This document shows, piece after piece, positions 43,615 to 57,130 of a stretch of 64,000 nt of DNA. The stretch is taken from the IMG/VR virus record IMGVR_UViG_3300028393_000019, positions 124,001-188,000 of that record; one strand, given 5' to 3'. The notes beneath the pieces were generated by a model. The model had not been told where the DNA came from. It searched no databases and was given only the letters and a program-made list of their open reading frames with translations. A program made the translations under genes and the position numbers. Positions within the stretch are counted from its first letter, which is position 1. Each line of letters opens with the position of its first letter.

Positions 43615-45657
43615 ATGTTAAAGAAACTCATCCTAAGCCCGTGGACTGCACTGCTGACTCTAGTGTTGGTAGTGGGCATACGCATTGCAGATCCCTCATT
43701 TGTTGAAAGCGTACGACTACGCTATTTTGATACATTAATTGTAAACAAAGAACCAACATTTAATAATATTATCACGGTCAACATAGACGAAGCTAGTCTA
43801 GACAAATACGGCCAATGGCCACTACCAAGGGTTAACTATGCTGAAATTATTGAAGACCTTTATCATCGTAATGCTGGCCTTGTTGTGCTTAACGTGCTCA
43901 TGGCTGAGCGTGATCGTACTGGTGGAGATAGGGATCTGGCCTCCACTCTTAAACATTATCCGGTAATACTTCCTAGCGTTCCCAGTAATCAAACAAAGAA
44001 TACACCACGTGTTCCAGGCAGTGCTGTACTAGCACCAGAATGGTTAGATCAAATTGTTCAGTATCCTGGACTTGTTGCCAACATCTCAAGTTTAGAAAAT
44101 AGTGCGGCCGGTGTTGGTATTGTAAACACGCTACCAGAGATAGATGGTGTCAATCGTCGTATGCCTTTGATTGTGTCAGTTGACGGCAAACTTTATCCAT
44201 CAATGAGTTTAGAAACTCTGCGTGTGGCCGCAGGTGACACAACATTCCAAGTTAAGTTGTTTGAAGGTGGCGTTGAGAAAATGCGTATCCCCAAGTTTGG
44301 GCCTGTGACTACAGATAATCTGGGGCGTGTTTGGATTGATTGGAGTCAACAAAATCGTAGTTTTAGTTTGATTAACTTACCCAAAGATTTAGAAGGTGCT
44401 GTTGTTATAGTAGGACCTACAGCCGCAGGTATCGGTAATCCGTTACCAACTAGCAAAGGCGCAATATGGCCTCATGATGTACAAGCCGCTGTTATTGGCA
44501 CAATGATGAATGGAGTTGTTATACAACGGCCTGATTGGGCAGACGGTGCAGAAATATTGGGCTTATTGACCGCAGGTATTTTATTATTATTTTTAACAAG
44601 GTGGACTTATGTTGGTATTGGCGCAGGTGTTGTTATTATTGGCTCTATTATTCCTCTATGTGGACTCGCATATAGCAGTGGCTTACAACTCGTGGATGCG
44701 ACTGTTCCGGTCGGGGGCCTTGTTTTGGTTATGCTTCACGCTTATGGTGTTAAGTTTGTAAGTGAATACTTACAGAAACAAGCAATCAAGAAACAGTTTG
44801 CTGGCTATTGCAGTAAGGAAGTAGTCGAACTACTACAAAAAGATCCAGACTTGATCAAGCGTGGTGTACGTAAAGACGTAAGTGTCATGTTCAGTGATCT
44901 ACGTGGCTTTACTCCTATTGGTGAACATTACGGAGATGATGTTGCTGGCTTGGGCAAGTATATGAACGGATACATGGACAGCATTAGTCGTCCCATGCTA
45001 GATAATAATGGAATGATTATCAAGTACGTAGGCGATGCAAGTATGCACATACACGGTGCCCCTATTGAAGATCCTAATCACGCTAGAACAATAGTTGCTG
45101 TTGGACTTGAAATGCTAGACAAAGTAGACGAGTATACTAACATTATGGAAGCACAAGGATTGCCACCAGCCGCAATGGGTTGGGGTTGTAACTCAGGTAT
45201 TGGCTTTATCGGTGAGATGGGTTCAACAGAACGACACAGCTATGACATCTTGGGTGACATGGTTTCAACTGCGGCACGACTAGAAGCACGTTGTAAAGCA
45301 TATGGTGTATTGTGTATTATTGGTGCTGAAACATACAACCGTACTAAGGATGATTTCTTCTACTTGTATTTGGATAACTTACAACCAAAAGGTAAAACTG
45401 TAGCAGATGCTATCTATACAGCATTACGAACCAAAGGCAACGACTACAGTAAAGAACTTGCCACACACAATAAGATGCATATCCTGTACAAAGAAAAACA
45501 ATTTGATGCGGCTGCTATATTGTGTGGAGAATTGAAAGGCAAGTTTAGCGGACAAATGGACAAGTACTACAAAATGTGGATTGAACGCTGTGCGTTTATG
45601 AAACAGCAAGATCTAGGCGATGATTGGAACGGTGAGTTTATTGCTCACGAGAAATAA
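43615..45657 (+). CDS. CHASE2-domain class III adenylate/guanylate cyclase
   Basis: IDEASL..YGQWP CHASE2 domain, three TMs, FSDLRGFT, KYVGDA, AARLE. Confidence 0.92.
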   Translation: MLKKLILSPWTALLTLVLVVGIRIADPSFVESVRLRYFDTLIVNKEPTFNNIITVNIDEASLDKYGQWPLPRVNYAEIIEDLYHRNAGLVVLNVLMAERDRTGGDRDLASTLKHYPVILPSVPSNQTKNTPRVPGSAVLAPEWLDQIVQYPGLVANISSLENSAAGVGIVNTLPEIDGVNRRMPLIVSVDGKLYPSMSLETLRVAAGDTTFQVKLFEGGVEKMRIPKFGPVTTDNLGRVWIDWSQQNRSFSLINLPKDLEGAVVIVGPTAAGIGNPLPTSKGAIWPHDVQAAVIGTMMNGVVIQRPDWADGAEILGLLTAGILLLFLTRWTYVGIGAGVVIIGSIIPLCGLAYSSGLQLVDATVPVGGLVLVMLHAYGVKFVSEYLQKQAIKKQFAGYCSKEVVELLQKDPDLIKRGVRKDVSVMFSDLRGFTPIGEHYGDDVAGLGKYMNGYMDSISRPMLDNNGMIIKYVGDASMHIHGAPIEDPNHARTIVAVGLEMLDKVDEYTNIMEAQGLPPAAMGWGCNSGIGFIGEMGSTERHSYDILGDMVSTAARLEARCKAYGVLCIIGAETYNRTKDDFFYLYLDNLQPKGKTVADAIYTALRTKGNDYSKELATHNKMHILYKEKQFDAAAILCGELKGKFSGQMDKYYKMWIERCAFMKQQDLGDDWNGEFIAHEK

Positions 45658-46351
45658 GTTTTGCAAGTCCTAATAAACTAAAAAGTCTCAGCCACATATA
45701 ACCAATATCAAATTCAAACCAGCGGCGACTCAGTTTAACGCTTGCTGGATTAAGATGATGGTTATTATGAAGTTCTTCACCGCCCACCACAATGCCCCAA
45801 GGAACAATGTTGCGACTACTATCACGAGTAGTTCCGTTCTTGTAACCATACCAATGTCCTATACCGTTGATAACTCCAGCGGCCCAAAATGGAATCCATA
45901 TCATTTGCACACCCCACACTACAAATCCCCACGGTCCAAAGAACAATAGATCTATGATCAGCATTAGAAGAATACCGAGGCGGCTATGGGGTGTATAAAT
46001 GTTACGCTCAATCCAATCGTCAGGAGTACCTACTCCAAACTTGTTGACCATGTCTGTGTCTTTACTTGCTAGATGATAAAGGCCTGCACCTTTGAAAAAT
46101 ACACGAGCGATGCCGTATACGTGCGGGCTATGCGGATCACCCGCATTATCACTAAATGCATGATGCTTACGATGTATAGCCACCCATTGTTTGGTTACCA
46201 TACCAGTTGTAAGCCATAGCCATGCTCGCATGAAATGGCTTAGTATCGGGTTGAATGCGATTCCCTTGTGCGCTTGGCCTCTGTGTAAAAACAAAGTAAC
46301 GGAAACGATAGTGATGTGTGTGACTACAAGTGTGTATATAATTATGTTCAT
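45638..46351 (-). CDS. delta-9-type fatty acid desaturase
   Basis: His boxes HRGQAH, HRKHH, HNNHH. Confidence 0.92.
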   Translation of the reverse strand: MNIIIYTLVVTHITIVSVTLFLHRGQAHKGIAFNPILSHFMRAWLWLTTGMVTKQWVAIHRKHHAFSDNAGDPHSPHVYGIARVFFKGAGLYHLASKDTDMVNKFGVGTPDDWIERNIYTPHSRLGILLMLIIDLLFFGPWGFVVWGVQMIWIPFWAAGVINGIGHWYGYKNGTTRDSSRNIVPWGIVVGGEELHNNHHLNPASVKLSRRWFEFDIGYMWLRLFSLLGLAKLISREQ

Positions 46352-47262: not shown

Positions 47263-47598
47263 TTATTTTTTATTTTTGATATTGTCAGCTTCGTCCATGG
47301 CATCATGGAACTTGACGTTGGCTTGTGCTTCCACTATGGCAGTTTCCATAACACGATCTGATTCGATCATCTTGCCACGAATGGTCAGCACTGTGTTGAC
47401 TTTTTGATTCAAACGAATTAGGTCATTGTCCAACATGCGTACACGATCTATCAGTGCGATAAGCACAGTGTTGGCATCGTTGATAACAGGCTTGATTTCT
47501 TTGGTTGCCCATTCCCACACATACTTGATAATGAAACCCATTCCCACAGCCATTACTATGGGAAATCCGTACTTGTTGACTAGATCTACTACATCCAT
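47263..47598 (-). CDS. membrane protein (holin-like), paralog of 47925..48206
   Basis: GFP + TM + coiled coil; DRVRMLDNDLIR vs DNRVKTMNHDVIR. Confidence 0.65.
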   Translation of the reverse strand: MDVVDLVNKYGFPIVMAVGMGFIIKYVWEWATKEIKPVINDANTVLIALIDRVRMLDNDLIRLNQKVNTVLTIRGKMIESDRVMETAIVEAQANVKFHDAMDEADNIKNKK

Positions 47599-47738
47599 TA
47601 CAGCACCTTACCTAATACATATCCCACTACAAACACAATAGCACAGAATTTTAATAAATCTCTATCAGTCCAAATCTGATGATCGATACCAAATTCTGCT
47701 ATGCTTTGCGGCATTCTGTTTATTTTTTGTTTATTCAT
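47598..47738 (-). CDS. 46-aa membrane peptide (not in ORF track)
   Basis: MNKQKINR...KFCAIVFVVGYVLGKVL; coupled on both sides. Confidence 0.5.
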   Translation of the reverse strand: MNKQKINRMPQSIAEFGIDHQIWTDRDLLKFCAIVFVVGYVLGKVL

Positions 47739-47925
47739 TGCAGTTCACCTTGTGTCCTCGAGCAAATTGCTCTACTGGGTCCAACTTGACTAGCATACTA
47801 CGGCCGTCACGATTGACAACTTTGAAACAGTCGCCATGTTTCCAGCCCAGTGCATCTATGTTTAATTCGGGGTCAAACTTGATGTACTCGGGCTCTAGGT
47901 CCCAGTCGTAATCGTAATGCCTCAT
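47731..47925 (-). CDS. hypothetical protein
   Basis: Coupled ORF (TAATG). Confidence 0.6.
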   Translation of the reverse strand: MRHYDYDWDLEPEYIKFDPELNIDALGWKHGDCFKVVNRDGRSMLVKLDPVEQFARGHKVNCNE

Positions 47926-48206
47926 TAATCTCTCCTTGCATCGTTCTTGCCGTCTGCACGGCTGATACGGTCTACATCTGGCCGTAAGCCGAGAGCATTT
48001 GATACAATAGTGTCAATGCGGATTACATCATGGTTCATGGTTTTTACACGATTATCAAGTGCTGTGATAATACCAGCCATGCCCTTTACGCTACTAAGGA
48101 CACCTGCCAGTAACAACTTGATCGTTAGATACACAAAATAGCCGCCTGCTAGTGCTGCCGCGACAGGAAACCCAAGGTCCCCGATGATTTTGAAAATTTC
48201 GCCCAT
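47925..48206 (-). CDS. membrane protein (holin-like)
   Basis: LGFPVAAALAGGYFVY TM followed by coiled coil; TAAATA upstream. Confidence 0.65.
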   Translation of the reverse strand: MGEIFKIIGDLGFPVAAALAGGYFVYLTIKLLLAGVLSSVKGMAGIITALDNRVKTMNHDVIRIDTIVSNALGLRPDVDRISRADGKNDARRD

Positions 48207-48259: not shown

Positions 48260-48288
48260 TTGCTATCTTGCTAGAAAGGATATATAAT
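48260..48288 (+). promoter_or_regulatory. sigma70-type promoter for the small basic ORFs and tmRNA
   Basis: TTGCTA-17-TATAAT. Confidence 0.65.
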
Positions 48289-48312: not shown

Positions 48313-48420
48313 ATGCCGAGTCCTCGTAGAGTTTCGCAAATTTTAAAAGGTAAAAAACCACCTAGGCCAAAGACTGTAAAAGCTATGGCTAAACGGGTAG
48401 TCAGGAGAAAATCAAAATGA
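48313..48420 (+). CDS. 35-aa highly basic peptide
   Basis: AAGGAG RBS; MPSPRRVSQILKGKKPPRPKTVKAMAKRVVRRKSK. Confidence 0.65.
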   Translation: MPSPRRVSQILKGKKPPRPKTVKAMAKRVVRRKSK

Positions 48421-48488
48421 CACAAGGTCGCGTAAAATCAGTCAAAGCTAGAGCCAAACGTGCAACTCGTAAAGCACGTAACAAGTAA
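48417..48488 (+). CDS. 23-aa highly basic peptide
   Basis: AGGAG RBS, ATGA overlap; MTQGRVKSVKARAKRATRKARNK. Confidence 0.6.
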   Translation: MTQGRVKSVKARAKRATRKARNK

Positions 48489-48494
48489 TAGCAA

Positions 48495-48841
48495 AAGAAT
48501 TGTTGTACAAGCCTTAAAGTAAGGCATTCTGGACGCGGGTTCGACTCCCGCCAGGTCCACCATAAGCATATTAGGTCGTTGAGTTAAAAAGTCGCATGTG
48601 ATGCGCTCAGACTAAAATAGTATGCTTTTGATGGGCCTGCCATGGTTTCGACAGGGTGAGATAGGATAAAGGTCAACACGTGGGGTCACGTAAAATACAA
48701 ATAAAGTAAATGCAAAAGCAAATACATTCGAGTATTTCCAAGTTCCTGTAACATTAGCTACTGCTAATGATGCAGAATTTGCAATCGCAGCCTAAGAAAC
48801 TGCACTCGCGAGGTAGGACTTACCTTGTCATCAAAACAACC
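48495..48841 (+). ncRNA. ssrA: two-piece (circularly permuted) tmRNA
   Basis: Acceptor piece ends GCGGGTTCGACTCCCGC-CAGGTCC-ACCA (48562); coding piece starts GGGCCTG (48633) giving G3:U70; tag frame ends ANDAEFAIAA-stop (48795); outer ends approximate. Confidence 0.9.
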
Positions 48842-48868
48842 AAAAAGGCACTTTCGAGTGCCTTTTTT
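48842..48868 (+). terminator. intrinsic terminator after tmRNA
   Basis: AAAAAGGCACT-TTCG-AGTGCCTTTTTT. Confidence 0.88.
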
Positions 48869-48869
48869 A

Positions 48870-48898
48870 TTGACCAGTAAACAATTTGCATATATAAT
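48870..48898 (+). promoter_or_regulatory. sigma70-type promoter
   Basis: TTGACC-17-TATAAT. Confidence 0.7.
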
Positions 48899-48944
48899 AG
48901 GGTACTGTGTAAAAACAGTCATTTTAATTAAAAGGAAGTAAAAC

Positions 48945-49397
48945 ATGAAGAAAATTGCAATCGCAACCCTATTGGCCCTAGCGGCCGCAACAGCCAGTGC
49001 TGTAGAAGTTGGCGTCAACGGATCGTACGATTACGGTTCACCAACCCAACGTCCAGGTGCAGGTATCACAATCGGTCAGAAATATGACAAGTTTGGTGTC
49101 ACTGCTGGATTTGATCGTTACTCAAAAGGTACAGATCAAAACAAGTGGACACTGGTTGGTTCATATGATGTGTATTCAGTCGGTGCCGCAACGTTCGCAG
49201 TCAAAGCTGGTGCCGCATATTTGGACAACTATGGTAATGTTGCTGATGGTTATGCTGGTCTAGTTGGCACAGGTGTCAGCTATGCAGTTGCTAAGAATGT
49301 TGCATTGACAGCAGACTATCGCTATCAGTTCGGCCAGTCACGTGTTAACCAATTTGATGGCAACACAATTTCTACAGGCATCAAGGTCTCATTCTAA
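48945..49397 (+). CDS. small outer-membrane beta-barrel protein (OmpA/Ail-like)
   Basis: Signal peptide, alternating beta strands, C-terminal Phe. Confidence 0.8.
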   Translation: MKKIAIATLLALAAATASAVEVGVNGSYDYGSPTQRPGAGITIGQKYDKFGVTAGFDRYSKGTDQNKWTLVGSYDVYSVGAATFAVKAGAAYLDNYGNVADGYAGLVGTGVSYAVAKNVALTADYRYQFGQSRVNQFDGNTISTGIKVSF

Positions 49398-50320: not shown

Positions 50321-50409
50321 GGAAGTGTGCGCTGAATTGGTTGAAGGCAACGGACTGTAAATCCGCCACATAAGAAACATTGTTGGTTCGAATCCAACCA
50401 CTTCCACCA
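50321..50409 (+). tRNA. tRNA-Tyr(GTA)
   Basis: Cloverleaf, long variable arm, encoded CCA. Confidence 0.92.
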
Positions 50410-50414
50410 AATTT

Positions 50415-50489
50415 GGTCCTGTCATATAGTGGTTATTATACCGGCCTGTCTAGTCGGATATCGGGGTTCGATTCCCCGCAGGATCGCCA
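50415..50489 (+). tRNA. tRNA-Asp(GTC)
   Basis: CCGGC-CTGTCTA-GTCGG arm, CCA. Confidence 0.92.
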
Positions 50490-50497
50490 AGTATATT

Positions 50498-50574
50498 CGG
50501 AGTGTAGCGCAGTCTGGTAGCGCACCTGGTTTGGGACCAGGGGGTCCAAGGTTCGAATCCTTGTACTCCGACCA
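50498..50574 (+). tRNA. tRNA-Pro(TGG)
   Basis: CCTGG-TTTGGGA-CCAGG arm, CCA. Confidence 0.95.
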
Positions 50575-50581
50575 ATTTTAT

Positions 50582-50656
50582 GCACGGTTCGTCTATCGGT
50601 TAGGACACTGGCCTTTCACGTCAGTAAGACGGGTTCGATTCCCGTACCGTGTACCA
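50582..50656 (+). tRNA. tRNA-Glu(TTC)
   Basis: CTGGC-CTTTCAC-GTCAG arm, CCA. Confidence 0.93.
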
Positions 50657-50659
50657 AGA

Positions 50660-50841
50660 ACGTTCCGCTTTGTTAGCGGATACTGTGACCCGCAGGATGG
50701 GAAGTGAGGTGACTCTCAAGGGTGGTTCTAGTCTTACCGAACTAGCGTTAGCAACACGATAGCGGTCCCTGTCGGGAAGCGGGTGGAGGGCATGCGTGAT
50801 GGACCTAGTCCTGATGTGCTATAATTACCGCCGAGGGATGT
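50660..50841 (+). ncRNA. candidate structured RNA
   Basis: GC-rich; closing ACGTTCC/GGGATGT; ACCCGC 50688/GCGGGT 50779; several hairpins. Confidence 0.55.
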
Positions 50842-50851
50842 CAGAGCTTTT

Positions 50852-50925
50852 CCTCTTGTAGTTAAATGGTATAACAGTCGGCTGATAACCGGCCATTACA
50901 AGTTCGATTCTTGTCGAGAGGACCA
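50852..50925 (+). tRNA. tRNA-Ile(GAT)
   Basis: GTCGG-CTGATAA-CCGGC arm, CCA. Confidence 0.92.
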
Positions 50926-50953
50926 ATTTTTAACAAAGAACAAAGGAAATGTT

Positions 50954-51331
50954 ATGTCATATAGTGACTGGAATAACTCTGCTAAAATAGCAGACATGGT
51001 AGGTAAAACTTTTACAAGTGTAAAAGCAGATGGCAACGAGTTGGTGTTTGAAAACAGCGTGGATCGTTATGTGTTCTTTCATGCACAAGATTGTTGCGAA
51101 CATGTGCGCATTGAAGACATCGCGGGCGACTTGAGCGACCTAGAAGGTGAACCTTTAGTAATAGCAGACGAAGTTGAAGGTGAAAGCCCAGCTGACTTTG
51201 AAGCATACGAAAGTTACACTTGGACATTTTACAAGTTCGCTACTCGCAAGGGCTATGTGGACGTGAGATGGCTAGGAGAAAGCAACGGGTACTACAGCGA
51301 AAGCGTAAACCTAGGATACGAAACAGTTTAA
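50954..51331 (+). CDS. acidic hypothetical phage protein
   Basis: AAGGA RBS; HAQDCCE ... WTFYK ... SNGYYSE. Confidence 0.8.
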   Translation: MSYSDWNNSAKIADMVGKTFTSVKADGNELVFENSVDRYVFFHAQDCCEHVRIEDIAGDLSDLEGEPLVIADEVEGESPADFEAYESYTWTFYKFATRKGYVDVRWLGESNGYYSESVNLGYETV

Positions 51332-51381
51332 TTTTATAAAAGGAGATCTGTCATGACCAGTGACAAGAGTGATAAGATGAT

Positions 51382-51456
51382 GGGGGTATAACTTAACGGC
51401 TAAAGTAGCGGGCTTTTAACCCGTAAATCAGAGTTCGATTCTCTGTGCCCCTACCA
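51382..51456 (+). tRNA. tRNA-Lys(TTT)
   Basis: GCGGG-CTTTTAA-CCCGT arm, CCA. Confidence 0.92.
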
Positions 51457-51553
51457 TATAAAAACATACTGGATCTTCTAGTGGACTAAGACGCTGGCAA
51501 ATAGGTCGGTGAACGTGGTGTTCAAATCCCACTCTAGTGTGTTTCTATATGGT
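51453..51553 (+). ncRNA. tRNA-like element on a ~20-bp closing stem, lacking CCA
   Basis: D-like arm TCTT..AGTGG..AAGA, T-like arm GTGG-TGTTCAAATC-CCAC, non-canonical anticodon loop. Confidence 0.55.
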
Positions 51554-51631
51554 ATTACTTGTAGATAAATCGAGATTGTTTTTTAATCTCTTTAATCTTT
51601 TTCCTATACTTGAAACGGATGTATAAAGATT

Positions 51632-52435
51632 TTAAAAATGCAAACATTTAATCTTCTCAGCTAGATCTTTGGCTATTAGATCGTGTCCGGATTGCGTAAA
51701 ATGCCATTGGGGCAAGTAGTCAGCATTTGTTATTTCTTCCAAAGATTTAGCAGTTAGTTTAAAGTCATAAAACTCTTTTAACAACTGCTGTTGGATATCA
51801 TTTAACAAGATTGGATCTTTTTCATTCACTATTAGATCGACCTCTTGCCCTTTTAGGTGCGGTTCTTCCAAAGGTTGATTTAACTTAGTAGGCGAGATAC
51901 GTAACAGATAACAGGGTATATTTTTAGAACGAAGTAGTCTTACAGCATATAGCACAGACACATAGTCTTCAACCATCGTAAGCGATTCGTTAAAAAATTC
52001 AAGAAAGAATTCTTGCATGATATTGTTTTGTCTACTATTTAAAAAATGAGTCGGCCAGTTTGGTTGTAGAACTGCACTGTTTACTAGGTTATTTGAATAA
52101 TTCACTAGTAGTCGATTATGAGTAGTCATTTGAATCACTGCTACAGTATCATCGTAGTGGTTTTCAGGAAATTTTAAAATAGCTCGCATAGCTATTTCTT
52201 TATTGGAAATACCTCGTAGGGCAATATTTTCAATCTCTGCATTGAGTAGATTGCCTACCAATGATGGGTAACAATATTGTTTATTATATTCGTTTATTTG
52301 TTCATCGGATGCAGACCTAGTAGCTTTACCAGCTTGAAACACATTCATAGCGGTGTATTGGGGGACGAATTTTTCTTCCCATAGCTCTGTACCAGCGGTA
52401 ATACTGCATCCTGCGAAAACGATTTTTTTAATCAT
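51632..52435 (-). CDS. SGNH-hydrolase-like hypothetical protein inserted antisense in the tRNA array
   Basis: GCSITAG, NIALRGISN, HFTQSGH. Confidence 0.7.
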   Translation of the reverse strand: MIKKIVFAGCSITAGTELWEEKFVPQYTAMNVFQAGKATRSASDEQINEYNKQYCYPSLVGNLLNAEIENIALRGISNKEIAMRAILKFPENHYDDTVAVIQMTTHNRLLVNYSNNLVNSAVLQPNWPTHFLNSRQNNIMQEFFLEFFNESLTMVEDYVSVLYAVRLLRSKNIPCYLLRISPTKLNQPLEEPHLKGQEVDLIVNEKDPILLNDIQQQLLKEFYDFKLTAKSLEEITNADYLPQWHFTQSGHDLIAKDLAEKIKCLHF

Positions 52436-52462
52436 AGTAAAATATTTATTATAATTTTTTAC

Positions 52463-52538
52463 AGTAGAGTAGCATAGCGGCTAATGCACCACCTTCATAC
52501 GGTGTTTATCGTGGGTTCGAGTCCCACCTCTACTACCA
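52463..52538 (+). tRNA. tRNA-Met(CAT) (elongator Met, or Ile2 if lysidine-modified)
   Basis: CACC-TTCATAC-GGTG arm, paired 1-72, CCA. Confidence 0.88.
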
Positions 52539-52542
52539 AATT

Positions 52543-52618
52543 GGAAGTTTAGCTCAGCTGGTAGAGCGTCTGCCTTACACGCAGAATGTCGGCGGTTCGA
52601 TCCCGTCAACTTCCACCA
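52543..52618 (+). tRNA. tRNA-Val(TAC)
   Basis: TCTGC-CTTACAC-GCAGA arm, CCA. Confidence 0.95.
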
Positions 52619-52624
52619 AACTGT

Positions 52625-52698
52625 TGGGGGTTAGTTAAATGGTATAACCGCGGATTTTGATTCCGCTATTAAAGGTTCGATTCCTTTACCCTCTGCCA
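52625..52698 (+). tRNA. tRNA-Gln(TTG)
   Basis: GCGGA-TTTTGAT-TCCGC arm, CCA. Confidence 0.92.
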
Positions 52699-52704
52699 AT
52701 CAAT

Positions 52705-52780
52705 GGTGTCTTTAGTGTAGTGGCCTGCACCCTGCTCTGTGAAAGCGGTAGTACCGGATCGATACCGGTAAGGCACCCCA
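52705..52780 (+). tRNA. tRNA-His(GTG)
   Basis: G-1/C73; CTGCT-CTGTGAA-AGCGG arm, CCA. Confidence 0.92.
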
Positions 52781-52785
52781 AACAT

Positions 52786-52861
52786 GCTACTTTAGCTGAT
52801 GTGGTCATAGCGGCGGTCTGAAGAACCGTTGAACCAGGTTCGATTCCTGGAGGTAGCACCA
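52786..52861 (+). tRNA. tRNA-Phe(GAA)
   Basis: GCGGT-CTGAAGA-ACCGT arm, CCA. Confidence 0.93.
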
Positions 52862-52864
52862 AGT

Positions 52865-53064
52865 TTTGTAAGTGTTAGCAAGAGAAAGTCACGCTGTCTA
52901 GGTTTCTTCGAAGGACCGAAACAGTAGAAGGTGATGGGTTCGACACCCACTAGGTCCATTGAGGCGACTAAACTGGACAAGTATTCCAAGTAACTTATCC
53001 TGACCCTGCCGGCTCAATTACAAGGGAAAATGGTTGCGATGAGAGGGACGCAACAACTTACAAA
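52865..53064 (+). ncRNA. candidate structured RNA (~200 nt)
   Basis: Closing TTTGTAAGT/ACTTACAAA; internal UUCG hairpin and T-loop-like GGGTTCGACACCC. Confidence 0.55.
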
Positions 53065-53126
53065 TTCAACAGACCCCCGCTTTGTCAGGTTGTGCGGTAA
53101 ACAATCTGACACTTACTAAGTAATTG

Positions 53127-53368
53127 TATTAGTAAAAGATTTAAGGTGTGATAGTGTTTCGCAAGAACTTTGAGGATGCCGGAAGCGTTCAAAGAGGATA
53201 GTTATAGACTATAACACTGATTGGCAGATAGAGTTGGGTATTGTTTTCAGCATTGACCCAACAGTCGATCACGCATTCCATGTTAGGCGAGACCAAAAGA
53301 GCAGATCTGAAAAGTCTGGGTCGCCACTGCTAACGCAAAACCAAAACTCTGTGAATCTTTTACTAATA
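53127..53368 (+). ncRNA. candidate structured RNA (~240 nt)
   Basis: Perfect 15-bp closing stem 53127-53141/53354-53368; many internal hairpins with GNRA loops. Confidence 0.6.
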
Positions 53369-53375
53369 TCTTTAT

Positions 53376-53451
53376 GCGGGCGTAGCTCAGTTGGTAGAGC
53401 ATTACCTTGCCAAGGTAAATGTCGAGAGTTCGAACCTCTTCGCCCGCTCCA
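53376..53451 (+). tRNA. tRNA-Gly(GCC)
   Basis: Cloverleaf, U73, CCA. Confidence 0.95.
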
Positions 53452-53505
53452 AATTATGGCTCCTAGACTTGTTCACATAGTGTCCCCTGGGAGTTTTTCT
53501 TTTAT

Positions 53506-53595
53506 GCCCGGGTGGCGAAATTGGTAGACGCACTTCTCTCAAAAGGAAGAAGGAAAAACACCTAGTTGTGAGTTCGAATCTCATCCCGGGCACCA
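53506..53595 (+). tRNA. tRNA-Leu(CAA)
   Basis: CTTCT-CTCAAAA-GGAAG arm, long variable arm, CCA. Confidence 0.9.
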
Positions 53596-53597
53596 AT

Positions 53598-53689
53598 GCC
53601 AGCGAGACTTGACAGTCAGAGAGGTTTTATAAACCTTTTAGCGCCAGATTAGCGTTCTTGAGAGGGTTTGATTCCCTCCGCTGGTACCA
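53598..53689 (+). tRNA. atypical tRNA with TAT anticodon (nominally Ile)
   Basis: GCCAGCG/CGCTGGT-ACCA; GAGGT-TTTATAA-ACCTT arm; short D-arm; long variable arm; TTTGA T-loop. Confidence 0.75.
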
Positions 53690-53690
53690 C

Positions 53691-53764
53691 GCTCTTATAA
53701 TTTAATGGTAGAATGCCTCCTTGGTATGGAGGCAATGATGGTTCGATTCCCTCTAAGAGCACCA
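53691..53764 (+). tRNA. tRNA-Thr(GGT)
   Basis: CCTCC-TTGGTAT-GGAGG arm, CCA. Confidence 0.88.
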
Positions 53765-53769
53765 AACAC

Positions 53770-53844
53770 CTGGCTATAGTACAATGGATAGTACAATGAG
53801 CTTCTACCTCATGAATGTGGGTTCGATTCCTGCTAGCCGGACCA
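53770..53844 (+). tRNA. tRNA-Arg(TCT)
   Basis: ATGAG-CTTCTAC-CTCAT arm, CCA. Confidence 0.92.
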
Positions 53845-53852
53845 ATCAATAT

Positions 53853-53927
53853 CGGCCATTGGTGAAATGGATATCATCTCTGTCTTCGAAACAGAGGGTG
53901 TGGGTTCGATTCCTGCATGGCCGGCCA
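53853..53927 (+). tRNA. tRNA-Arg(TCG)
   Basis: TCTGT-CTTCGAA-ACAGA arm, CCA. Confidence 0.92.
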
Positions 53928-53956
53928 CGATAAGTCAAATATATTTCACAAAGATG

Positions 53957-53985
53957 TTGACACACAGCATCAGATGTTGTATAAT
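53957..53985 (+). promoter_or_regulatory. internal sigma70-type promoter of the tRNA array
   Basis: TTGACA-17-TATAAT. Confidence 0.85.
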
Positions 53986-54012
53986 AGTTGTATACTAGGC
54001 AACTGGTACAAT

Positions 54013-54024
54013 AGTTCTTTAAAA
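54013..54024 (+). promoter_or_regulatory. boxA-like antitermination element
   Basis: AGTTCTTTAAAA resembles rrn boxA TGCTCTTTAACA; lies between the promoter and the next tRNA. Confidence 0.5.
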
Positions 54025-54038
54025 AATTAAAAGCAAAT

Positions 54039-54121
54039 GCCCCGATGGTGGAATTGGTAGACACGCTGGTCTTAGAAGCCAGTGCGCAAGCGTCCGAGTT
54101 CGAGTCTCGGTTGGGGCACCA
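54039..54121 (+). tRNA. tRNA-Leu(TAG)
   Basis: CTGGT-CTTAGAA-GCCAG arm, CCA. Confidence 0.93.
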
Positions 54122-54246
54122 TATAAATGCTTTCTGAGTAGCTACAGTGGAACACCGAAATACCGGTCAATGTCGACCATGTACCGGGACCGGCCATGAA
54201 GAGTGGGGCTACCGTGGATTCAAGCGCCACAGAGAGCACCTATATG
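54120..54246 (+). ncRNA. candidate structured RNA
   Basis: Closing CATATA..TGCTTTCTG/CAGAGAGCA..TATATG; T-loop-like GTGG-ATTCAAGCG-CCAC. Confidence 0.5.
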
Positions 54247-54311
54247 ATCGAGTCTTGGACACGCAGACTTTAAAACGAGGTGGAAGTAGGTGGAAGCCCT
54301 ACACCTAATAT

Positions 54312-54385
54312 CGCGGGATAGAGTAACGGTAATTCAGAAGTCTCATAAGCTTCAGATCTTGGTTCGATTCCAGGTCCCGCTACCA
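54312..54385 (+). tRNA. initiator-like tRNA-Met(CAT)
   Basis: C1 mismatched with position 72; CTCATAA loop; lacks the three G-C anticodon-stem pairs. Confidence 0.85.
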
Positions 54386-54391
54386 AATAGA

Positions 54392-54481
54392 GGAAATGTG
54401 GCAGAGTCCGGTTTATTGCAACAGTCTTGAAAACTGTCGAGTCGAAAGGCTCCGTGAGTTCGAATCTCACCGTTTCCGCCA
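54392..54481 (+). tRNA. tRNA-Ser(TGA)
   Basis: Long variable arm, G73, CCA. Confidence 0.93.
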
Positions 54482-54487
54482 AGTTGA

Positions 54488-54561
54488 GTCTCATTAGTAT
54501 AATGGCAGTATAGCGGTCTCCAAAACCGTTGGTCGGGGTTCGAGTCCCTGGTGGGACGCCA
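54488..54561 (+). tRNA. tRNA-Trp(CCA)
   Basis: GCGGT-CTCCAAA-ACCGT arm, CCA. Confidence 0.92.
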
Positions 54562-54571
54562 AATGTCAATT

Positions 54572-54655
54572 GCGAGAGTGGAGAAATGGTATACTCAAGA
54601 GACTTAAAATCTCTCGTCGAAAGGCATGCGGGTTCGAGTCCCGCTTCTCGCACCA
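54572..54655 (+). tRNA. tRNA-Leu(TAA)
   Basis: AGAGA-CTTAAAA-TCTCT arm, CCA. Confidence 0.93.
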
Positions 54656-54674
54656 TTCATAAAGGAGATGTAGT

Positions 54675-54818
54675 ATGTCAAAAAGAGAAGATGTTCTAAA
54701 CAAGGCATACGGCAACGTGCCTCGTGAAATTGGATTTAGCATAGTATGGGATTTCCTGCCAACTTGGCGCGGTGTGCGATACTACTGGCATAAATTAATA
54801 CGTAAGATAACAAGATAA
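54675..54818 (+). CDS. 47-aa hypothetical protein (not in ORF track)
   Basis: AAGGAG RBS; MSKREDVLNKAYGNVPREIG... Confidence 0.6.
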   Translation: MSKREDVLNKAYGNVPREIGFSIVWDFLPTWRGVRYYWHKLIRKITR

Positions 54819-54824
54819 GCAAAA

Positions 54825-54912
54825 GGATAGTTGGCCGAGTGGTTAAGGCAACGGTTTGCTAAACCGTCGTTCCGAAAGGGGCGCATAGGTTCGAATCCTA
54901 TACTATCCGCCA
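54825..54912 (+). tRNA. tRNA-Ser(GCT)
   Basis: Long variable arm, G73, CCA. Confidence 0.93.
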
Positions 54913-54959
54913 GTACATAGGAGATATACTCTCCGCCATTTTTTAAAAAGAGAAAAACT

Positions 54960-55181
54960 ATGATGAAACCAGGCAAGACGTTCAATTTGAACAAACAAAC
55001 CAAACGCTTTATGGCCACGTTTGTGAACGCAGAAGATCGTAATCATTTCAAACGCATGATGATCGATGCACAACTGTGCAGTGAAGTTGTTATCAAGAGT
55101 GCACCGCGTGACAAGAATGCACCGCGTGGTACTGCCAACTATCAAACTAACGATACAGGTACAGCAAGTACCGCAGTATAA
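54960..55181 (+). CDS. hypothetical protein
   Basis: 73-aa ORF between tRNAs. Confidence 0.65.
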   Translation: MMKPGKTFNLNKQTKRFMATFVNAEDRNHFKRMMIDAQLCSEVVIKSAPRDKNAPRGTANYQTNDTGTASTAV

Positions 55182-55190
55182 AAGCATTAT

Positions 55191-55266
55191 TCCGCAGTAG
55201 CTCAGTCGGTAGAGTAGATGACTGTTAATCATTTGGTCGGTGGTTCGAGCCCACCCTGTGGAGCCA
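55191..55266 (+). tRNA. tRNA-Asn(GTT)
   Basis: Cloverleaf, CTGTTAA loop, CCA. Confidence 0.95.
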
Positions 55267-55271
55267 GGATT

Positions 55272-55347
55272 GGGGGATTAGCTCATTTGGGAGAGCACCT
55301 GCTTTGCAAGCAGGGGGTGGTCGGTTCGATCCCGACATCCTCCACCA
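55272..55347 (+). tRNA. tRNA-Ala(TGC)
   Basis: G3:U70, TTTGCAA loop, CCA. Confidence 0.95.
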
Positions 55348-55399
55348 AGATCACCATTACACACGGTGTACAATAGGATAAGTAGTGTGTAACAAATTT

Positions 55400-55475
55400 G
55401 CCGGTTTAGCTCATTTGGTAGAGCGCCGCTCTTGTAAGGCGGATGTGGTCAGTTCGATTCCGACAACCGGCACCA
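55400..55475 (+). tRNA. tRNA-Thr(TGT)
   Basis: CCGCT-CTTGTAA-GGCGG arm, CCA. Confidence 0.94.
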
Positions 55476-55479
55476 AGTT

Positions 55480-55770
55480 TAAACATATTGAAATCTGTAA
55501 AAAGATCAGGTTTGGTATCCCAGTCACTATGATAGGCATAGCCCATATACTCAATACACCACAATATGTTTATTCGTTTCCCGGGACTACTGGCCGTAAC
55601 CCAAGTAGCGTAATTACAGTAACGATAACTGTACGGTGCATTGGATCTACCGCAAGGCCCGCTATATGGGCGACTTGAGAAATCACAAAGGCAGAGCACT
55701 AACTGTCTATATGGAAACATGCGGTACGGACACCAAGCCTAGTCTAGGGCATTCGGGAGAGTGTAACTAG
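55480..55770 (+). ncRNA. candidate pseudoknotted RNA
   Basis: 11-bp stem 55480-55490/55562-55572; loop GCCCATATA (55541) complementary to TATATGGGC (55663). Confidence 0.55.
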
Positions 55771-55771
55771 A

Positions 55772-55866
55772 CACTTTAATCAAACACACTTAGCCTAGCT
55801 ATAAGCTAGGTTGCAAGGACCACACACCATCTTAGAAAAAAGTGTTAAGTGTGTTTGATTAAAGTG
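55772..55866. repeat. 23-bp inverted repeat abutting tRNA-Gly
   Basis: CACTTTAATCAAACACACTTAGC / GTTAAGTGTGTTTGATTAAAGTG (one G:U). Confidence 0.85.
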
Positions 55867-55939
55867 CGGGATTAGTTTAATGGTAAAACAGCAGATTTCC
55901 AATCTTCGGTCAAGAGTTCGATTCTCTTATCCCGCTCCA
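55866..55939 (+). tRNA. tRNA-Gly(TCC)
   Basis: TTTCCAA loop, U73, CCA. Confidence 0.9.
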
Positions 55940-55959
55940 ATTTTTAAAAAGGAAAACAA

Positions 55960-56220
55960 ATGAAAGCAAGTCATATTTTGGTAGCCACACGTGAACAAGC
56001 TGATGCAATCTTGGCTGAAGCAACTGCATTGAATTTTGGATCACTTGCACAGCAGTACAGCTCATGCCCCAGTAAAGCACGTGGTGGCGACTTGGGCGAT
56101 TTCGGCCCAGGTCAAATGGTCAAGCCGTTTGAAGATGCTACTGTGGCAACAGCAGTTGGTGCTATTAGCCAGCCAGTGCAAACACAATTTGGTTTTCACT
56201 TGATCCATCGCACTGGATGA
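55960..56220 (+). CDS. ppiC: parvulin peptidyl-prolyl isomerase
   Basis: ASHILV, SSCPS...GGDLG.F..GQMV..FE, TQFGFHLI. Confidence 0.93.
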   Translation: MKASHILVATREQADAILAEATALNFGSLAQQYSSCPSKARGGDLGDFGPGQMVKPFEDATVATAVGAISQPVQTQFGFHLIHRTG

Positions 56221-56777
56221 TAATAGATTCAAACGATCTTTGCCGCAAGTATGATTACAGTAGTTTGATCTCAGCTACCGAAAACGACACAGCCATAGGC
56301 ATTATCAAAAGTATAATCGAAAGCGGCAACTACTTTAAAAACTCGCCTCCGTTTCAAACACAGGAAAATTTGTTTGGCAGATCCGAGGCAGTTTGGTTGA
56401 AATATCGTATGACATTTTTGACCAGTGTGTTTTTATATTTGGGACACGAAGCCAGAGTCAGCAACATGATGGCTTGGAGTTTTATGACCAATTTGAGCAC
56501 AGTAGAAGATCGTGACAAATATTGGCATCATCATGACAAACATTCGGGCAAAAGCCTAAGCGGAATCATGTACTTGCACATCCCCGACGATGTGAAGGAT
56601 TTTGACACATGTGGCACCGAACTGGCACCCAATGGGCCAGAGTCTCCTGGCAAATTTTTTGTACGACCCAGTTACTGCTCGTGGATTATCTATCCCAGCA
56701 ACATTTGGCATAGACCAGGTATTGTGCAAAGTGACAAATATCGATTTATTTTAGCCGCAGACGTTGACTACGAGTAA
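56217..56777 (+). CDS. putative 2OG-Fe(II) oxygenase
   Basis: WHHH, SGIMYL, YPS.IWH, R..LA. Confidence 0.7.
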   Translation: MIIDSNDLCRKYDYSSLISATENDTAIGIIKSIIESGNYFKNSPPFQTQENLFGRSEAVWLKYRMTFLTSVFLYLGHEARVSNMMAWSFMTNLSTVEDRDKYWHHHDKHSGKSLSGIMYLHIPDDVKDFDTCGTELAPNGPESPGKFFVRPSYCSWIIYPSNIWHRPGIVQSDKYRFILAADVDYE

Positions 56778-56792
56778 AATAGATGTTATAAT
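56764..56792 (+). promoter_or_regulatory. sigma70-type promoter
   Basis: TTGACT-17-TATAAT. Confidence 0.75.
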
Positions 56793-56813
56793 AACGTTTT
56801 AACGGAGATATCA

Positions 56814-57047
56814 ATGCGAAATACAACACTTAGCCGTGGTCCAGAAATTGACAGAGAACTGTGCTGTAGCAAAATGGGGACTGGTATGTATGATCTTGTT
56901 CTGGCAGCCACAGCTCGAGCAAGAGAGATCCGTCGTCAGCATAGAAGCAGTGAGTCATATGAGCATATCTATCCAATAGTAACTGCTATACTGGAAATCC
57001 AACAAGGCAAGATTGATCCAAAAGAGTATCTCAAACGAGTACGTTAA
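56814..57047 (+). CDS. rpoZ: RNA polymerase omega subunit-like protein
   Basis: YDLVLAATARAREI ... PIVTAILEIQQGKI matches the omega motifs. Confidence 0.75.
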   Translation: MRNTTLSRGPEIDRELCCSKMGTGMYDLVLAATARAREIRRQHRSSESYEHIYPIVTAILEIQQGKIDPKEYLKRVR

Positions 57048-57052
57048 TTCGT

Positions 57053-57130
57053 GCAACGGTGGCAGAGCGGCCCAATGCACCGGATTGCAAATCCGTAAAA
57101 CCGGGGGTTCAAATCCCTCCCGTTGCTCCA
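57053..57130 (+). tRNA. tRNA-Cys(GCA)
   Basis: CGGA-TTGCAAA-TCCG arm, U73, CCA. Confidence 0.92.

What the first reader, a model, noticed from the sequence alone, without database searches (positions are those of the whole stretch)
48495..48841. Phage two-piece tmRNA with a possibly long tag
Seen: the T-arm/CCA piece precedes the GGGCCTG 5' piece. They are separated by a 70-nt intervening segment closed by AAGCATA/TATGCTT, and G3:U70 is intact. The tag frame from GCA 48712 reads AKANTFEYFQVPVTLATANDAEFAIAA (27 aa), with a conventional ANDAEFAIAA nested at its end. Established: permuted tmRNAs are known in alphaproteobacteria and in some cyanobacteria and betaproteobacteria. Inference: the phage may alter ribosome rescue and tagging; the resume codon is uncertain.
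Basis: partly seen in the sequence, partly recalled or inferred. Interest (0 to 1): 0.6.

Follow-up and report, generated by a model that had tools for sequence, protein, structure and literature searches.

The report
Phage two-piece tmRNA, long tag
An uncultured giant freshwater phage carries its own split (two-piece) ribosome-rescue RNA that most likely adds an unusually long 27-residue degradation tag. Dozens of related phage contigs in lake samples carry similar long tags, and the large related genomes tested also encode Clp protease parts.

Summary
Window 48495-48869 (+) is a circularly permuted beta-type tmRNA gene (ARAGORN; Rfam RF04321 118.9 bits, RF01850 118.5 bits). It sits in a 266-kb IMG/VR phage record, just upstream of 28 tRNA genes.

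Phage two-piece tmRNAs are already known, so the kind is not new. The long tag is real. GCA 48712 has the family-wide UAAAU context and the same distance from the 5' end as in short-tag relatives. It runs in frame into the conventional ANDAEFAIAA-stop.

At least 119 IMG/VR contigs share the exact 32-nt acceptor piece. ARAGORN permuted tmRNAs among them, 44 with tags of 20 aa or more. These start A-x-A-x-T, mostly followed by F-(E/D/K)-aromatic. They evolve as coding sequence, and all length differences are whole codons.

The extension also holds a hairpin with compensatory changes (48739-48781). No bacterial permuted tmRNA among 185,579 species genomes shares the acceptor piece.

SmpB is absent from the window's record and from five large relatives, two of them near complete. 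The window's record encodes ClpP; the large relatives encode ClpA-like proteins, most also ClpP, and one ClpX.

Processing, charging and tagging remain untested. Verdict: a new variant of a known kind, of moderate interest.

The parts
48260..48288 (+). Promoter-like site (TTGCTA-17-TATAAT). It may drive two tiny basic ORFs and the tmRNA precursor.
   Evidence: a consensus scan only. No closer promoter-like site was found in front of the acceptor piece in this window.
48314..48488 (+). Two tiny, very basic ORFs directly upstream on the same strand: 35 aa (48314-48420, SD AAGGAG 48301-06) and 23 aa (48417-48488).
   Evidence: The first recurs in L094, L119, L027 and L095. No Pfam family passes its cut-off. 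Whether they belong to the element is uncertain.
48495..48562 (+). Acceptor (3') piece of the two-piece tmRNA. P2a 5' strand UGUUG 48501-05; local hairpin 48511-25; P2c 5' strand CAUUCUG 48525-31; T arm 48535-51; acceptor 3' strand 48552-58; A 48559; CCA 48560-62.
   Evidence: Covariation of P2c and P2a across 85 unique relatives. The 5' end is not mapped.
48563..48632 (+). Intervening segment of 70 nt, presumably removed in processing. It is closed by 48564-70 paired with 48621-27, and UGAU precedes G1.
   Evidence: Its length is 53-273 nt in relatives, as expected for a discarded spacer.
48633..48711 (+). 5' part of the coding piece. Acceptor 5' strand GGGCCUG 48633-39 (G3 = 48635); GGUUUCGAC; P2c 3' strand CAGGGUG 48652-58; P2a 3' strand CAACA 48674-78; PK1-position hairpin CGUG/CACG 48679-90; resume context UAAAU 48707-11.
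48712..48795 (+). Tag reading frame. Resume codon GCA 48712, 27 codons (AKANTFEYFQVPVTLATANDAEFAIAA), stop TAA 48793-95.
48739..48781 (+). RNA hairpin inside the tag frame (18 pairs). The 5' arm encodes QVPVTLA and the 3' arm encodes ANDAEF.
   Evidence: (z = -4.0 for the ORF): 6 of 18 pairs have compensatory changes, 79.6% of cells are paired against 25-46% when slid, and 0 of 500 shuffles reach the score.
48787..48828 (+). Helix-5-like stem GCAG 48787-90 / CUGC 48800-03 with the stop codon in its loop, then an 8-bp hairpin 48808-28.
   Evidence: single-sequence folds only.
48842..48872 (+). Intrinsic terminator: 11-bp stem, UUCG loop and U run. This is the likely 3' end of the precursor and coding piece.
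   Evidence: The scan listed the palindromic stem on the minus strand. On the plus strand it is followed by the T run at 48863-69.

Best explanation
Window 48495-48869 is a functional, circularly permuted (two-piece) ssrA gene of the beta type, carried by an uncultured freshwater jumbo phage.

Inferred mechanism:
1. One precursor is transcribed and ends at the terminator 48842-72.
2. Host RNase P cuts 5' of G48633, and tRNA-type 3' trimming exposes CCA48562. The 70-nt spacer is discarded.
3. The acceptor piece and the coding piece stay together through the 7-bp acceptor stem and the P2 helices.
4. Host AlaRS charges the RNA through G3:U70, and host SmpB brings it to stalled ribosomes. The phage has no smpB.
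5. Translation resumes at GCA 48712 and adds 27 residues.

The tag has three parts: an N-terminal module AKANTFEYF, a linker QVPVTLAT whose codons form the 5' arm of an RNA hairpin, and a conventional ANDAEFAIAA degron for ClpXP or ClpAP. The phage supplies ClpP, and its close relatives also supply ClpA. The likely purpose is to keep ribosomes free and clear truncated proteins during infection.

What is shown: the gene anatomy, the covariation of the helices between the two pieces, the coding-type evolution of the long frame, and the hairpin. What is inferred: processing, charging, tagging and proteolysis.
For: - Detectors: ARAGORN and two Rfam models well above threshold.
- Structure between the pieces: P2c shows 17 distinct sequence combinations with 119 of 119 cells paired. 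P2a shows at least 7 covarying variants.
- Resume codon: identical context and distance in short-tag and long-tag relatives.
- Coding evolution: in group B the variable columns by codon position are 5/5/12 and dN/dS is 0.18. All indels are multiples of 3. Only frame 0 is open in all 35 of 35 unique long ORFs.
- Hairpin covariation.
- Conserved position in a syntenic phage clade.
- The coding piece is present in contigs from lake metatranscriptome libraries.
- SmpB is absent from G000 and from 5 of 5 large relatives, two of them 97-100% complete.
- ClpP is present in G000 (254 bits) and in 8 of 10 large relatives. ClpA-like proteins (794-885 bits, IGF loop) are present in 8 of 10, and ClpX in one.
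Against: - No direct evidence for cleavage into two pieces, aminoacylation or tagging.
- The RNA-library data are assembled contigs. Their ends coincide with boundaries between conserved and variable sequence and cannot prove RNA ends. DNA carry-over is not excluded.
- In this window PK1 is only a 4-bp hairpin with no identifiable second stem.
- Selection on the N-terminal peptide module is only moderate: dN/dS is 0.41 for codons 5-9 and 0.61 for the whole group-A extension.
- The host is unknown.
- ClpA was not found in the held 72% of G000.
Confidence: 0.72

Rival explanations
1. The tmRNA is functional, but translation resumes at the internal GCU 48763 and gives only the conventional ANDAEFAIAA. 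The upstream 51 nt would be an untranslated structured spacer.
For: The beta_tmRNA model aligned its consensus tag to the last 10 codons. The 5' arm of the hairpin lies in the supposed extension, so RNA structure could explain part of its conservation.
Against: - GCU 48763 lacks the UAAAU context and lies about 50 nt too far from PK1 and the 5' end compared with short-tag relatives.
- The upstream frame is open and in register with the degron in 35 of 35 unique sequences, while the other frames are closed.
- All indels are whole codons, and substitutions are biased to third positions.
- Several long tags have no internal AND restart at all, for example ANASTFEYFTVEGFTADNGLVAA.
Confidence: 0.1
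2. The extension is translated, but its peptide has no function of its own. It is the by-product of an RNA hairpin inserted in the frame, for example to stabilise the RNA or to position the mRNA-like domain. It only has to stay open and in frame.
For: - Hairpins with compensatory changes occupy the middle of the extension in both sequence groups.
- In the window the 5' arm is simply complementary to the ANDAEF codons.
- dN/dS of the group-A extension is a rather relaxed 0.61.
Against: - The first 8-9 codons lie outside the hairpin, yet A-x-A-x-T is kept in all three groups and F-(E/D/K)-aromatic in groups A and B, with synonymous TTC/TTT and TAT/TAC changes.
- The group-B extension has dN/dS 0.18.
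- The same start, ANANTFDY, occurs in the 12-residue tag of cultured phage XacN1.
Confidence: 0.25
3. The gene is a decoy or inhibitor of host trans-translation, or a passively captured host gene or att-site remnant with no function in the phage.
For: A phage tmRNA-like molecule that is only the tRNA-like domain (mycobacteriophage DS6A) is reported to inhibit tmRNA (PMC4131195). Phages often carry tmRNA fragments at integration sites.
Against: - The gene is complete, and its frame and helices are maintained across at least 85 unique sequences in a syntenic clade.
- The exact acceptor piece is found in no bacterial permuted tmRNA among 185,579 species genomes. Only 10 one-piece genes share it.
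- No sign of recent capture was seen near it.
Confidence: 0.05

Closest known systems
Betaproteobacterial two-piece tmRNA (Rfam RF01850 beta_tmRNA; Sharkady and Williams 2004, as cited in PMC9004378)
   Same: Gene order (acceptor piece, spacer, coding piece), tRNA-like domain, P2, resume context UAAAU|GCA and an ANDxxFAxAA ending. The window scores 118.5 bits against a gathering score of 84, end to end.
   Different: - It is carried by a phage.
- The acceptor stem is GGGCCUG/CAGGUCC and the T loop UUCGACU, against the consensus GGGggUG/CAccUCC and UUCGAUU.
- The middle P2 segment is replaced by a local hairpin, and PK1 is reduced to a hairpin.
- Only one hairpin follows the frame.
- The tag is 27 aa instead of about 10.
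Phage-encoded two-piece tmRNAs (Methylophilales phage Melnitz and 53 two-piece forms among 133 unique phage tmRNAs, PMC9004378)
   Same: A complete permuted ssrA in aquatic, tRNA-rich myophage-like genomes. The same proposed roles apply: keep the hijacked translation machinery running and recycle amino acids.
   Different: Melnitz's gene is of the alphaproteobacterial type with a glutamine riboswitch. No riboswitch was found here by Rfam. An extended bipartite tag and a hairpin inside the frame are not described there.
Unannotated permuted tmRNAs of cultured phages XacN1, X1 (Xanthomonas), BUCT628 (Acinetobacter) and vB_Af_QDWS595 (Alcaligenes)
   Same: XacN1, BUCT628 and QDWS595 pass both RF04321 and RF01850; X1 passes RF04321 only. 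X1 has the same acceptor stem. XacN1's tag ANANTFDYALAA begins like the long tags. UGAU precedes G1 in all but BUCT628.
   Different: Their tags are 10-14 aa. There is no sequence similarity outside the tRNA-like part. None has ClpA.
Long tmRNA tags of Mycoplasma (about 27 aa, degraded by Lon; from my own knowledge of Gur and Sauer 2008, not checked here)
   Same: Tag length, and the presence of an internal hydrophobic and aromatic stretch.
   Different: The Mycoplasma tag ends in FA and replaces ClpXP recognition. The phage tag keeps a complete conventional A-I-A-A degron at its end.

Membership tests
tmRNA (ssrA), permuted two-piece form | tRNA-like domain: 7-bp acceptor stem with G3:U70, discriminator A, encoded CCA, and a T arm GGGUUCGAnUCCC. 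| tested here: met
   All elements are at 48531-62 and 48633-39.
tmRNA (ssrA), permuted two-piece form | Circular permutation: the 3' acceptor piece lies upstream of the 5' coding piece, with a spacer between them. | tested here: met
   The spacer is 70 nt. ARAGORN marks the gene as tmRNA*.
tmRNA (ssrA), permuted two-piece form | Score above the curated threshold of the family models. | tested here: met
   RF04321 118.9 against 47 bits; RF01850 118.5 against 84 bits.
tmRNA (ssrA), permuted two-piece form | Helix P2 between the two pieces, supported by covariation. | tested here: met
   P2c has 17 sequence combinations with 119 of 119 cells paired. P2a has at least 7 covarying variants.
tmRNA (ssrA), permuted two-piece form | Resume codon GCN with a conserved upstream context, and a short frame ending in a hydrophobic A-(L/I/V)-A-A followed by a stop. 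| tested here: met
   The frame is 27 codons rather than about 10.
tmRNA (ssrA), permuted two-piece form | Pseudoknot PK1 between P2 and the resume codon. | tested here: inconclusive
   Only a 4-bp hairpin is seen at 48679-90, with no second stem. Larger relatives have a longer element at this place.
tmRNA (ssrA), permuted two-piece form | Processing of the precursor into two RNAs. | not testable with these tools
   Only assembled contigs of RNA libraries were available. Their ends are uninformative.
tmRNA (ssrA), permuted two-piece form | Alanine charging, SmpB binding and tagging of stalled nascent chains. | not testable with these tools
   No SmpB gene is present in G000 or in five large relatives, so the host protein would be needed.
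Lon-directed long tags (Mycoplasma type) | A long tag whose C-terminus is no longer a ClpX/ClpA L-A-A-type degron. | tested here: not met
   The tag ends in AIAA, preceded by a full ANDAEF.
tRNA-like-domain-only phage tmRNA (DS6A type decoy) | Absence of a tag reading frame. | tested here: not met
   A complete frame is present and maintained.

The most novel reading that the evidence does not exclude
The extended tag is a phage-specific functional module. Freshwater jumbo phages that carry their own ClpA, ClpP and DnaK would use a private tmRNA to mark stalled host or phage nascent chains with a bipartite signal. That signal is an N-terminal A-x-A-x-T-F-(E/D/K)-aromatic element and a beta-prone linker in front of the classical degron. 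It would route the chains differently from host-tagged proteins, for example to the phage's own ClpAP, with better adaptor spacing, or to a second protease or chaperone. The hairpin inside the frame would tune stability or translation of the mRNA-like domain. This would be a phage-controlled branch of trans-translation rather than a simple spare copy.
Probability: 0.25. Interest if true: 0.75.

Novelty: new variant of a known kind. Interest (0 to 1): 0.5.

Why it matters
tmRNA tags are usually about 10 residues and are read as a plain ClpXP/ClpAP degron. Here a large, apparently phage-maintained lineage of two-piece tmRNAs has repeatedly kept tags of 22-33 residues. These tags share a start, and most contain a structured RNA element inside the frame.

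The large records tested also encode ClpA-like proteins, most also ClpP, and the window's record encodes DnaK. None encodes SmpB. If the extension changes the fate of tagged proteins, phages would be reprogramming ribosome rescue and proteolysis rather than merely topping it up.

There is also a practical point. Cultured phages (XacN1, X1, BUCT628, QDWS595) carry permuted tmRNA genes that are not annotated in their records. At least three of their four host genera are, to my knowledge, bacteria with one-piece tmRNA. The two-piece form therefore need not mirror the host's own tmRNA.

Tried and rejected
- **Bacterial relatives for comparison.** The genome search draws no relatives for a virus record. 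A locus cannot serve as a centre. An E. coli record only receives a W handle without kin. So I could not survey bacterial beta-type tmRNAs for long tags. The only evidence is the exact-pattern scan of 185,579 genomes, which gave 11 hits: 10 one-piece tmRNAs and one locus with no call.
- **Literature.** Sharkady and Williams 2004 (PMC516066) is not held. The supplements of the 2025 tmRNA database paper contain none of the tag motifs, but only 13.7 kb of text is held. Searches for phage tmRNA papers found nothing on extended tags.
- **RNA ends.** A contig from an RNA library starts at 48634, one base after the predicted 5' end. I reject this as evidence of processing. Contigs break where co-occurring strains diverge, and the variable spacer meets the conserved GGGCCUG exactly there. 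The joint 48566 to 48625 is most simply a relative with another spacer.
- **Internal resume codon.** Rejected; see the rival explanations.
- **ClpA linked to long tags.** Rejected. Short-tag relatives have ClpA-like genes too.
- **A naive longest-helix search for P2.** It was misled by A/U- and G·U-rich alternatives and was replaced by an anchored, weighted version.
- **Complex prediction of tag with ClpA or SspB.** Not run. The tag is 27 aa and the tool asks for chains of 30 or more.
- **The large protein searches.** Not used, because the claim does not rest on them.

Full report
**1. Observation**

- T arm: GCGGG/CCCGC with loop TTCGACT, 48535-51.
- Acceptor 3' strand CAGGTCC 48552-58, discriminator A 48559, CCA 48560-62.
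- A spacer of exactly 70 nt (48563-48632), closed by AAGCATA 48564-70 and TATGCTT 48621-27.
- The 5' strand GGGCCTG 48633-39, with G48635 opposite T48556 (G3:U70).
- A frame from GCA 48712 to TAA 48793-95 that reads AKANTFEYFQVPVTLATANDAEFAIAA.

ARAGORN calls a permuted tmRNA at 48470-48886 with the same tag. Rfam gives tmRNA_permuted RF04321 118.9 bits (E 1.3e-22) and beta_tmRNA RF01850 118.5 bits (E 1.8e-35). Both matches run end to end and lie well above their gathering scores.

**2. Genome context**

The window is G000:C1:124001-188000 of an IMG/VR virus record of 265,680 bp, estimated 72% complete.
- It carries 28 tRNA genes just downstream, at 50321-57130.
- It encodes a virion structural protein distantly like those of T4-like cyanophages, an RNR large subunit and a DnaK homologue.
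- It encodes a genuine ClpP at C1:228980-229522 (254 bits for PF00574; NF001368 294 bits, above its cut-off).
- GC content is 39-44%.
- No cultured phage is close at the DNA level.
- Freshwater metagenomes and lake metatranscriptomes hold the stretch.
- A phage-encoded outer-membrane beta-barrel protein at 48945-49397 points to a Gram-negative host. The host is otherwise unknown.

**3. A large phage lineage**

ARAGORN finds a permuted tmRNA in 99 of these loci. The spacers are 53-273 nt long.

In 185,579 bacterial and archaeal species genomes the same 32-mer occurs 11 times. Ten of those are one-piece tmRNAs, mostly in Saprospiraceae and other Bacteroidota MAGs. None is permuted. So this acceptor piece is, as far as an exact match can show, kept by phages and not by bacteria with two-piece tmRNA.

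Many of the contigs are syntenic with the window. The paralogous small membrane proteins at 47263-48206 (-), the OMP gene, the fatty-acid desaturase and the CHASE2-cyclase recur beside the tmRNA. This indicates one clade of mostly large freshwater phages with the gene at a fixed position.

**4. Structure**

The helices that must hold the two pieces together covary.
- The 7-bp helix next to the tRNA-like domain pairs CAUUCUG 48525-31 with CAGGGUG 48652-58. It occurs in 17 different sequence combinations among 85 unique relatives, and 119 of 119 cells are paired.
- The distal helix pairs UGUUG 48501-05 with CAACA 48674-78. It appears as UGCUGU/ACAGCA, GACUGU/ACAGUC, AGUUGU/GCAACU, GAUAGU/GCUAUC, GGUUGU/ACAACU and GGCUGU/ACAGCC in others.

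At the PK1 position the window has only a 4-bp hairpin (48679-90). I could not find a second stem.

After the frame come three elements:
- a small stem with the stop codon in its loop (48787-90 with 48800-03);
- one hairpin (48808-28);
- an intrinsic terminator (48842-72).

**5. The resume codon and the long tag**

In short-tag relatives (ANDEQFALAA and similar) and in long-tag relatives alike, the first codon GCA follows (G/A)UAAAU and lies 79-87 nt after G1. In the window this is GCA 48712. The internal GCU 48763 has neither the context nor the distance.

Of the 99 permuted calls, 44 have tags of 20 aa or more, giving 29 unique long tags. They fall into three groups that all begin A-(N/K/T)-A-(N/S/D)-T:
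- group A: ...TFEYFQVPVTLA..., which includes the window;
- group B: ...TFDFSAMSFTGNTV...;
- group C: ...TGTVKVTMGKNFRF....

Most end in a conventional ANDxxFALAA-like degron.

The evidence for translation of the extension is as follows.
- In all 35 unique long frames that have the canonical (G/A)UAAA context, the frame opened at the upstream codon reaches the hydrophobic end and its stop. Frame +1 contains stops in 35 of 35 and frame +2 in 31 of 35.
- All length differences are whole codons.
- Group B: variable columns by codon position are 5/5/12 of 20, and dN/dS is 0.18.
- Group A: dN/dS is 0.61.
- Codons 5-9, across groups A and B: dN/dS is 0.41. Synonymous TTC/TTT and TAT/TAC changes occur, and replacements are conservative (E/K/D, Y/F).

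I conclude that the 27-residue reading is the right one. The strength of selection on the peptide itself is moderate.

**6. A hairpin inside the frame**

Folding the frame gives an 18-pair hairpin at 48739-48781 (ORF z = -4.0). Its 3' arm is formed by the codons of ANDAEF, and its 5' arm encodes QVPVTLA.

On the six 27-codon tags that align without gaps:
- 6 of 18 pairs have changes on both sides;
- 79.6% of cells are paired, against 25-46% for slid partners;
- no shuffle out of 500 reaches the covariation score.

Group B has a different hairpin at the same relative place (CUGGAAAC/GUUUCCGG, or a UUCG-capped stem in the 31-codon form). It is 94% paired, and one pair shows four pair types.

The extension is therefore a composite: a single-stranded, peptide-conserved start followed by a structured RNA element that has to stay open and in frame. 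Part of the peptide may simply be what the hairpin happens to encode.

Cultured phage XacN1 has the 12-residue tag ANANTFDYALAA. This suggests that the long tags arose from such a tag. The likely route is insertion of the hairpin and a second, ANDxxFALAA-type end. This is inference.

**7. Partners**
- No SmpB gene (PF01668) is present in G000 or in five large relatives, two of them 97-100% complete. The RNA must therefore use host SmpB, and also host AlaRS and RNase P (established tmRNA biology; inference here).
- No SspB gene is present in G000.
- ClpP (212-269 bits) is present in 8 of 10 large relatives.
- A full-length ClpA-like protein is present in 8 of 10 large relatives. It is 746-784 aa and scores 794-885 bits on TIGR02639 end to end, below that model's equivalog cut-off of 993. 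The three checked in detail have two Walker A motifs and an IGF loop. The genes occur in long-tag and short-tag records alike.
- One relative also encodes ClpX, at 505 bits against a cut-off of 359.
- G000 shows no AAA_2 protein in its held 72%.
- Clp genes in jumbo phages are known (PMC7824862, PMC6102473). Those two papers do not mention tmRNA.
- The four cultured phages with permuted tmRNA lack ClpA.

**8. Expression**

Contigs from lake metatranscriptome libraries cover 48634-48717 and 48646-48804. The second carries a variant tag, AKTSTFEFF.... Neighbouring phage genes are covered too. This shows presence in RNA libraries only. Contig ends fall where strains diverge and cannot be read as RNA ends, and DNA carry-over is not excluded.

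**9. Comparison with what is known**

Two-piece tmRNAs in phages are documented. ARAGORN found 53 two-piece forms among 133 unique phage tmRNAs, mostly in aquatic phages, and Melnitz carries an alpha-type one with a glutamine riboswitch (PMC9004378). Huge phages with tmRNA and sometimes SmpB are also reported (PMC7162821).

The window's gene is of the beta type. It passes the sequence-testable membership criteria for permuted tmRNA, with PK1 inconclusive. I found nothing in the held literature about three things:
- the extended, bipartite tags;
- the hairpin within the frame;
- the co-occurrence with phage ClpA and ClpP in this clade.

The held library is incomplete, and the tmRNA database itself could not be searched.

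**10. Verdict**

The kind is known; the long-tag lineage is a new variant. Interest is moderate (0.5). Function is still inferred from sequence. A conserved 22-33-residue tag with an internal hairpin, in phages that bring their own Clp machinery, is a concrete and testable departure from the standard picture.

Noticed in passing
window 50321-57130: An array of 28 tRNA genes by ARAGORN. Rfam confirms 27 of them. The exception is a 92-nt tRNA-Ile(tat) call at 53598-53689, which may be spurious or may carry an insertion.
   Followed up: partly
window 48314-48488: Two tiny, extremely basic ORFs (35 aa with a strong SD, and 23 aa overlapping by ATGA) lie directly upstream of the tmRNA on the same strand. 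The first recurs beside the tmRNA in a few relatives. They could be RNA-binding peptides or a leader.
   Followed up: partly
window 43615-46351: A CHASE2-sensor adenylate/guanylate cyclase (680 aa, +) and a fatty-acid desaturase (237 aa, -). These are unusual auxiliary genes for a phage, and they are syntenic with the tmRNA in many related contigs.
   Followed up: partly
window 30358-32271: A full-length DnaK (Hsp70) homologue, 64-70% identical to the best DnaK matches in the phage collection (some of those records look bacterial) and about 50% identical to those of huge uncultured phages.
   Followed up: partly
window 48870-49397: An outer-membrane beta-barrel protein gene (150 aa, with signal peptide). 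It has a near-consensus sigma-70 promoter (TTGACC-17-TATAAT) right after the tmRNA terminator. It is conserved next to the tmRNA in relatives.
   Followed up: partly
window 47263-48206 (- strand): Two paralogous small membrane/coiled-coil proteins (111 and 93 aa, 24-28% identical to each other), with two tiny ORFs between them. They are the most widely conserved neighbours of the tmRNA, and no family match was found.
   Followed up: no
G000:C1:228980-229522 (L137:1462-2052); L138:1637-3901, L139:1583-3877 and L141:1552-3792 (ClpA-like genes); L140:669-1859 (ClpX gene): There is a genuine ClpP in the window's genome. Full-length ClpA-like genes with an IGF loop occur in relatives G001, G003 and G005. 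G004 has a ClpX gene in addition to a ClpA-like gene. None of these genomes has SmpB.
   Followed up: yes
L133 (MZ593728.1), L134 (AP018399.1), L135 (OQ427096.1), L136 (OK149171.2): Cultured phages BUCT628, XacN1, X1 and vB_Af_QDWS595 carry complete permuted tmRNA genes. No feature is annotated at these places in their records. To my knowledge, at least three of the four host genera have one-piece tmRNA.
   Followed up: yes
L120: A deletion derivative of the family. After GGGCCUG...GACAGGGUG the sequence jumps straight into codon 4 of a group-B tag. The distal P2 strand, PK1 and the resume codon are lost, so it is probably a dead copy.
   Followed up: no
window 48829-48841: The single-stranded 3' tail CAUCAAAACAACC can pair with the 5' UUGUUG of the acceptor piece. 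The minimum-energy fold of the whole precursor prefers this pairing to P2a. It may be an alternative or precursor-specific pairing.
   Followed up: no
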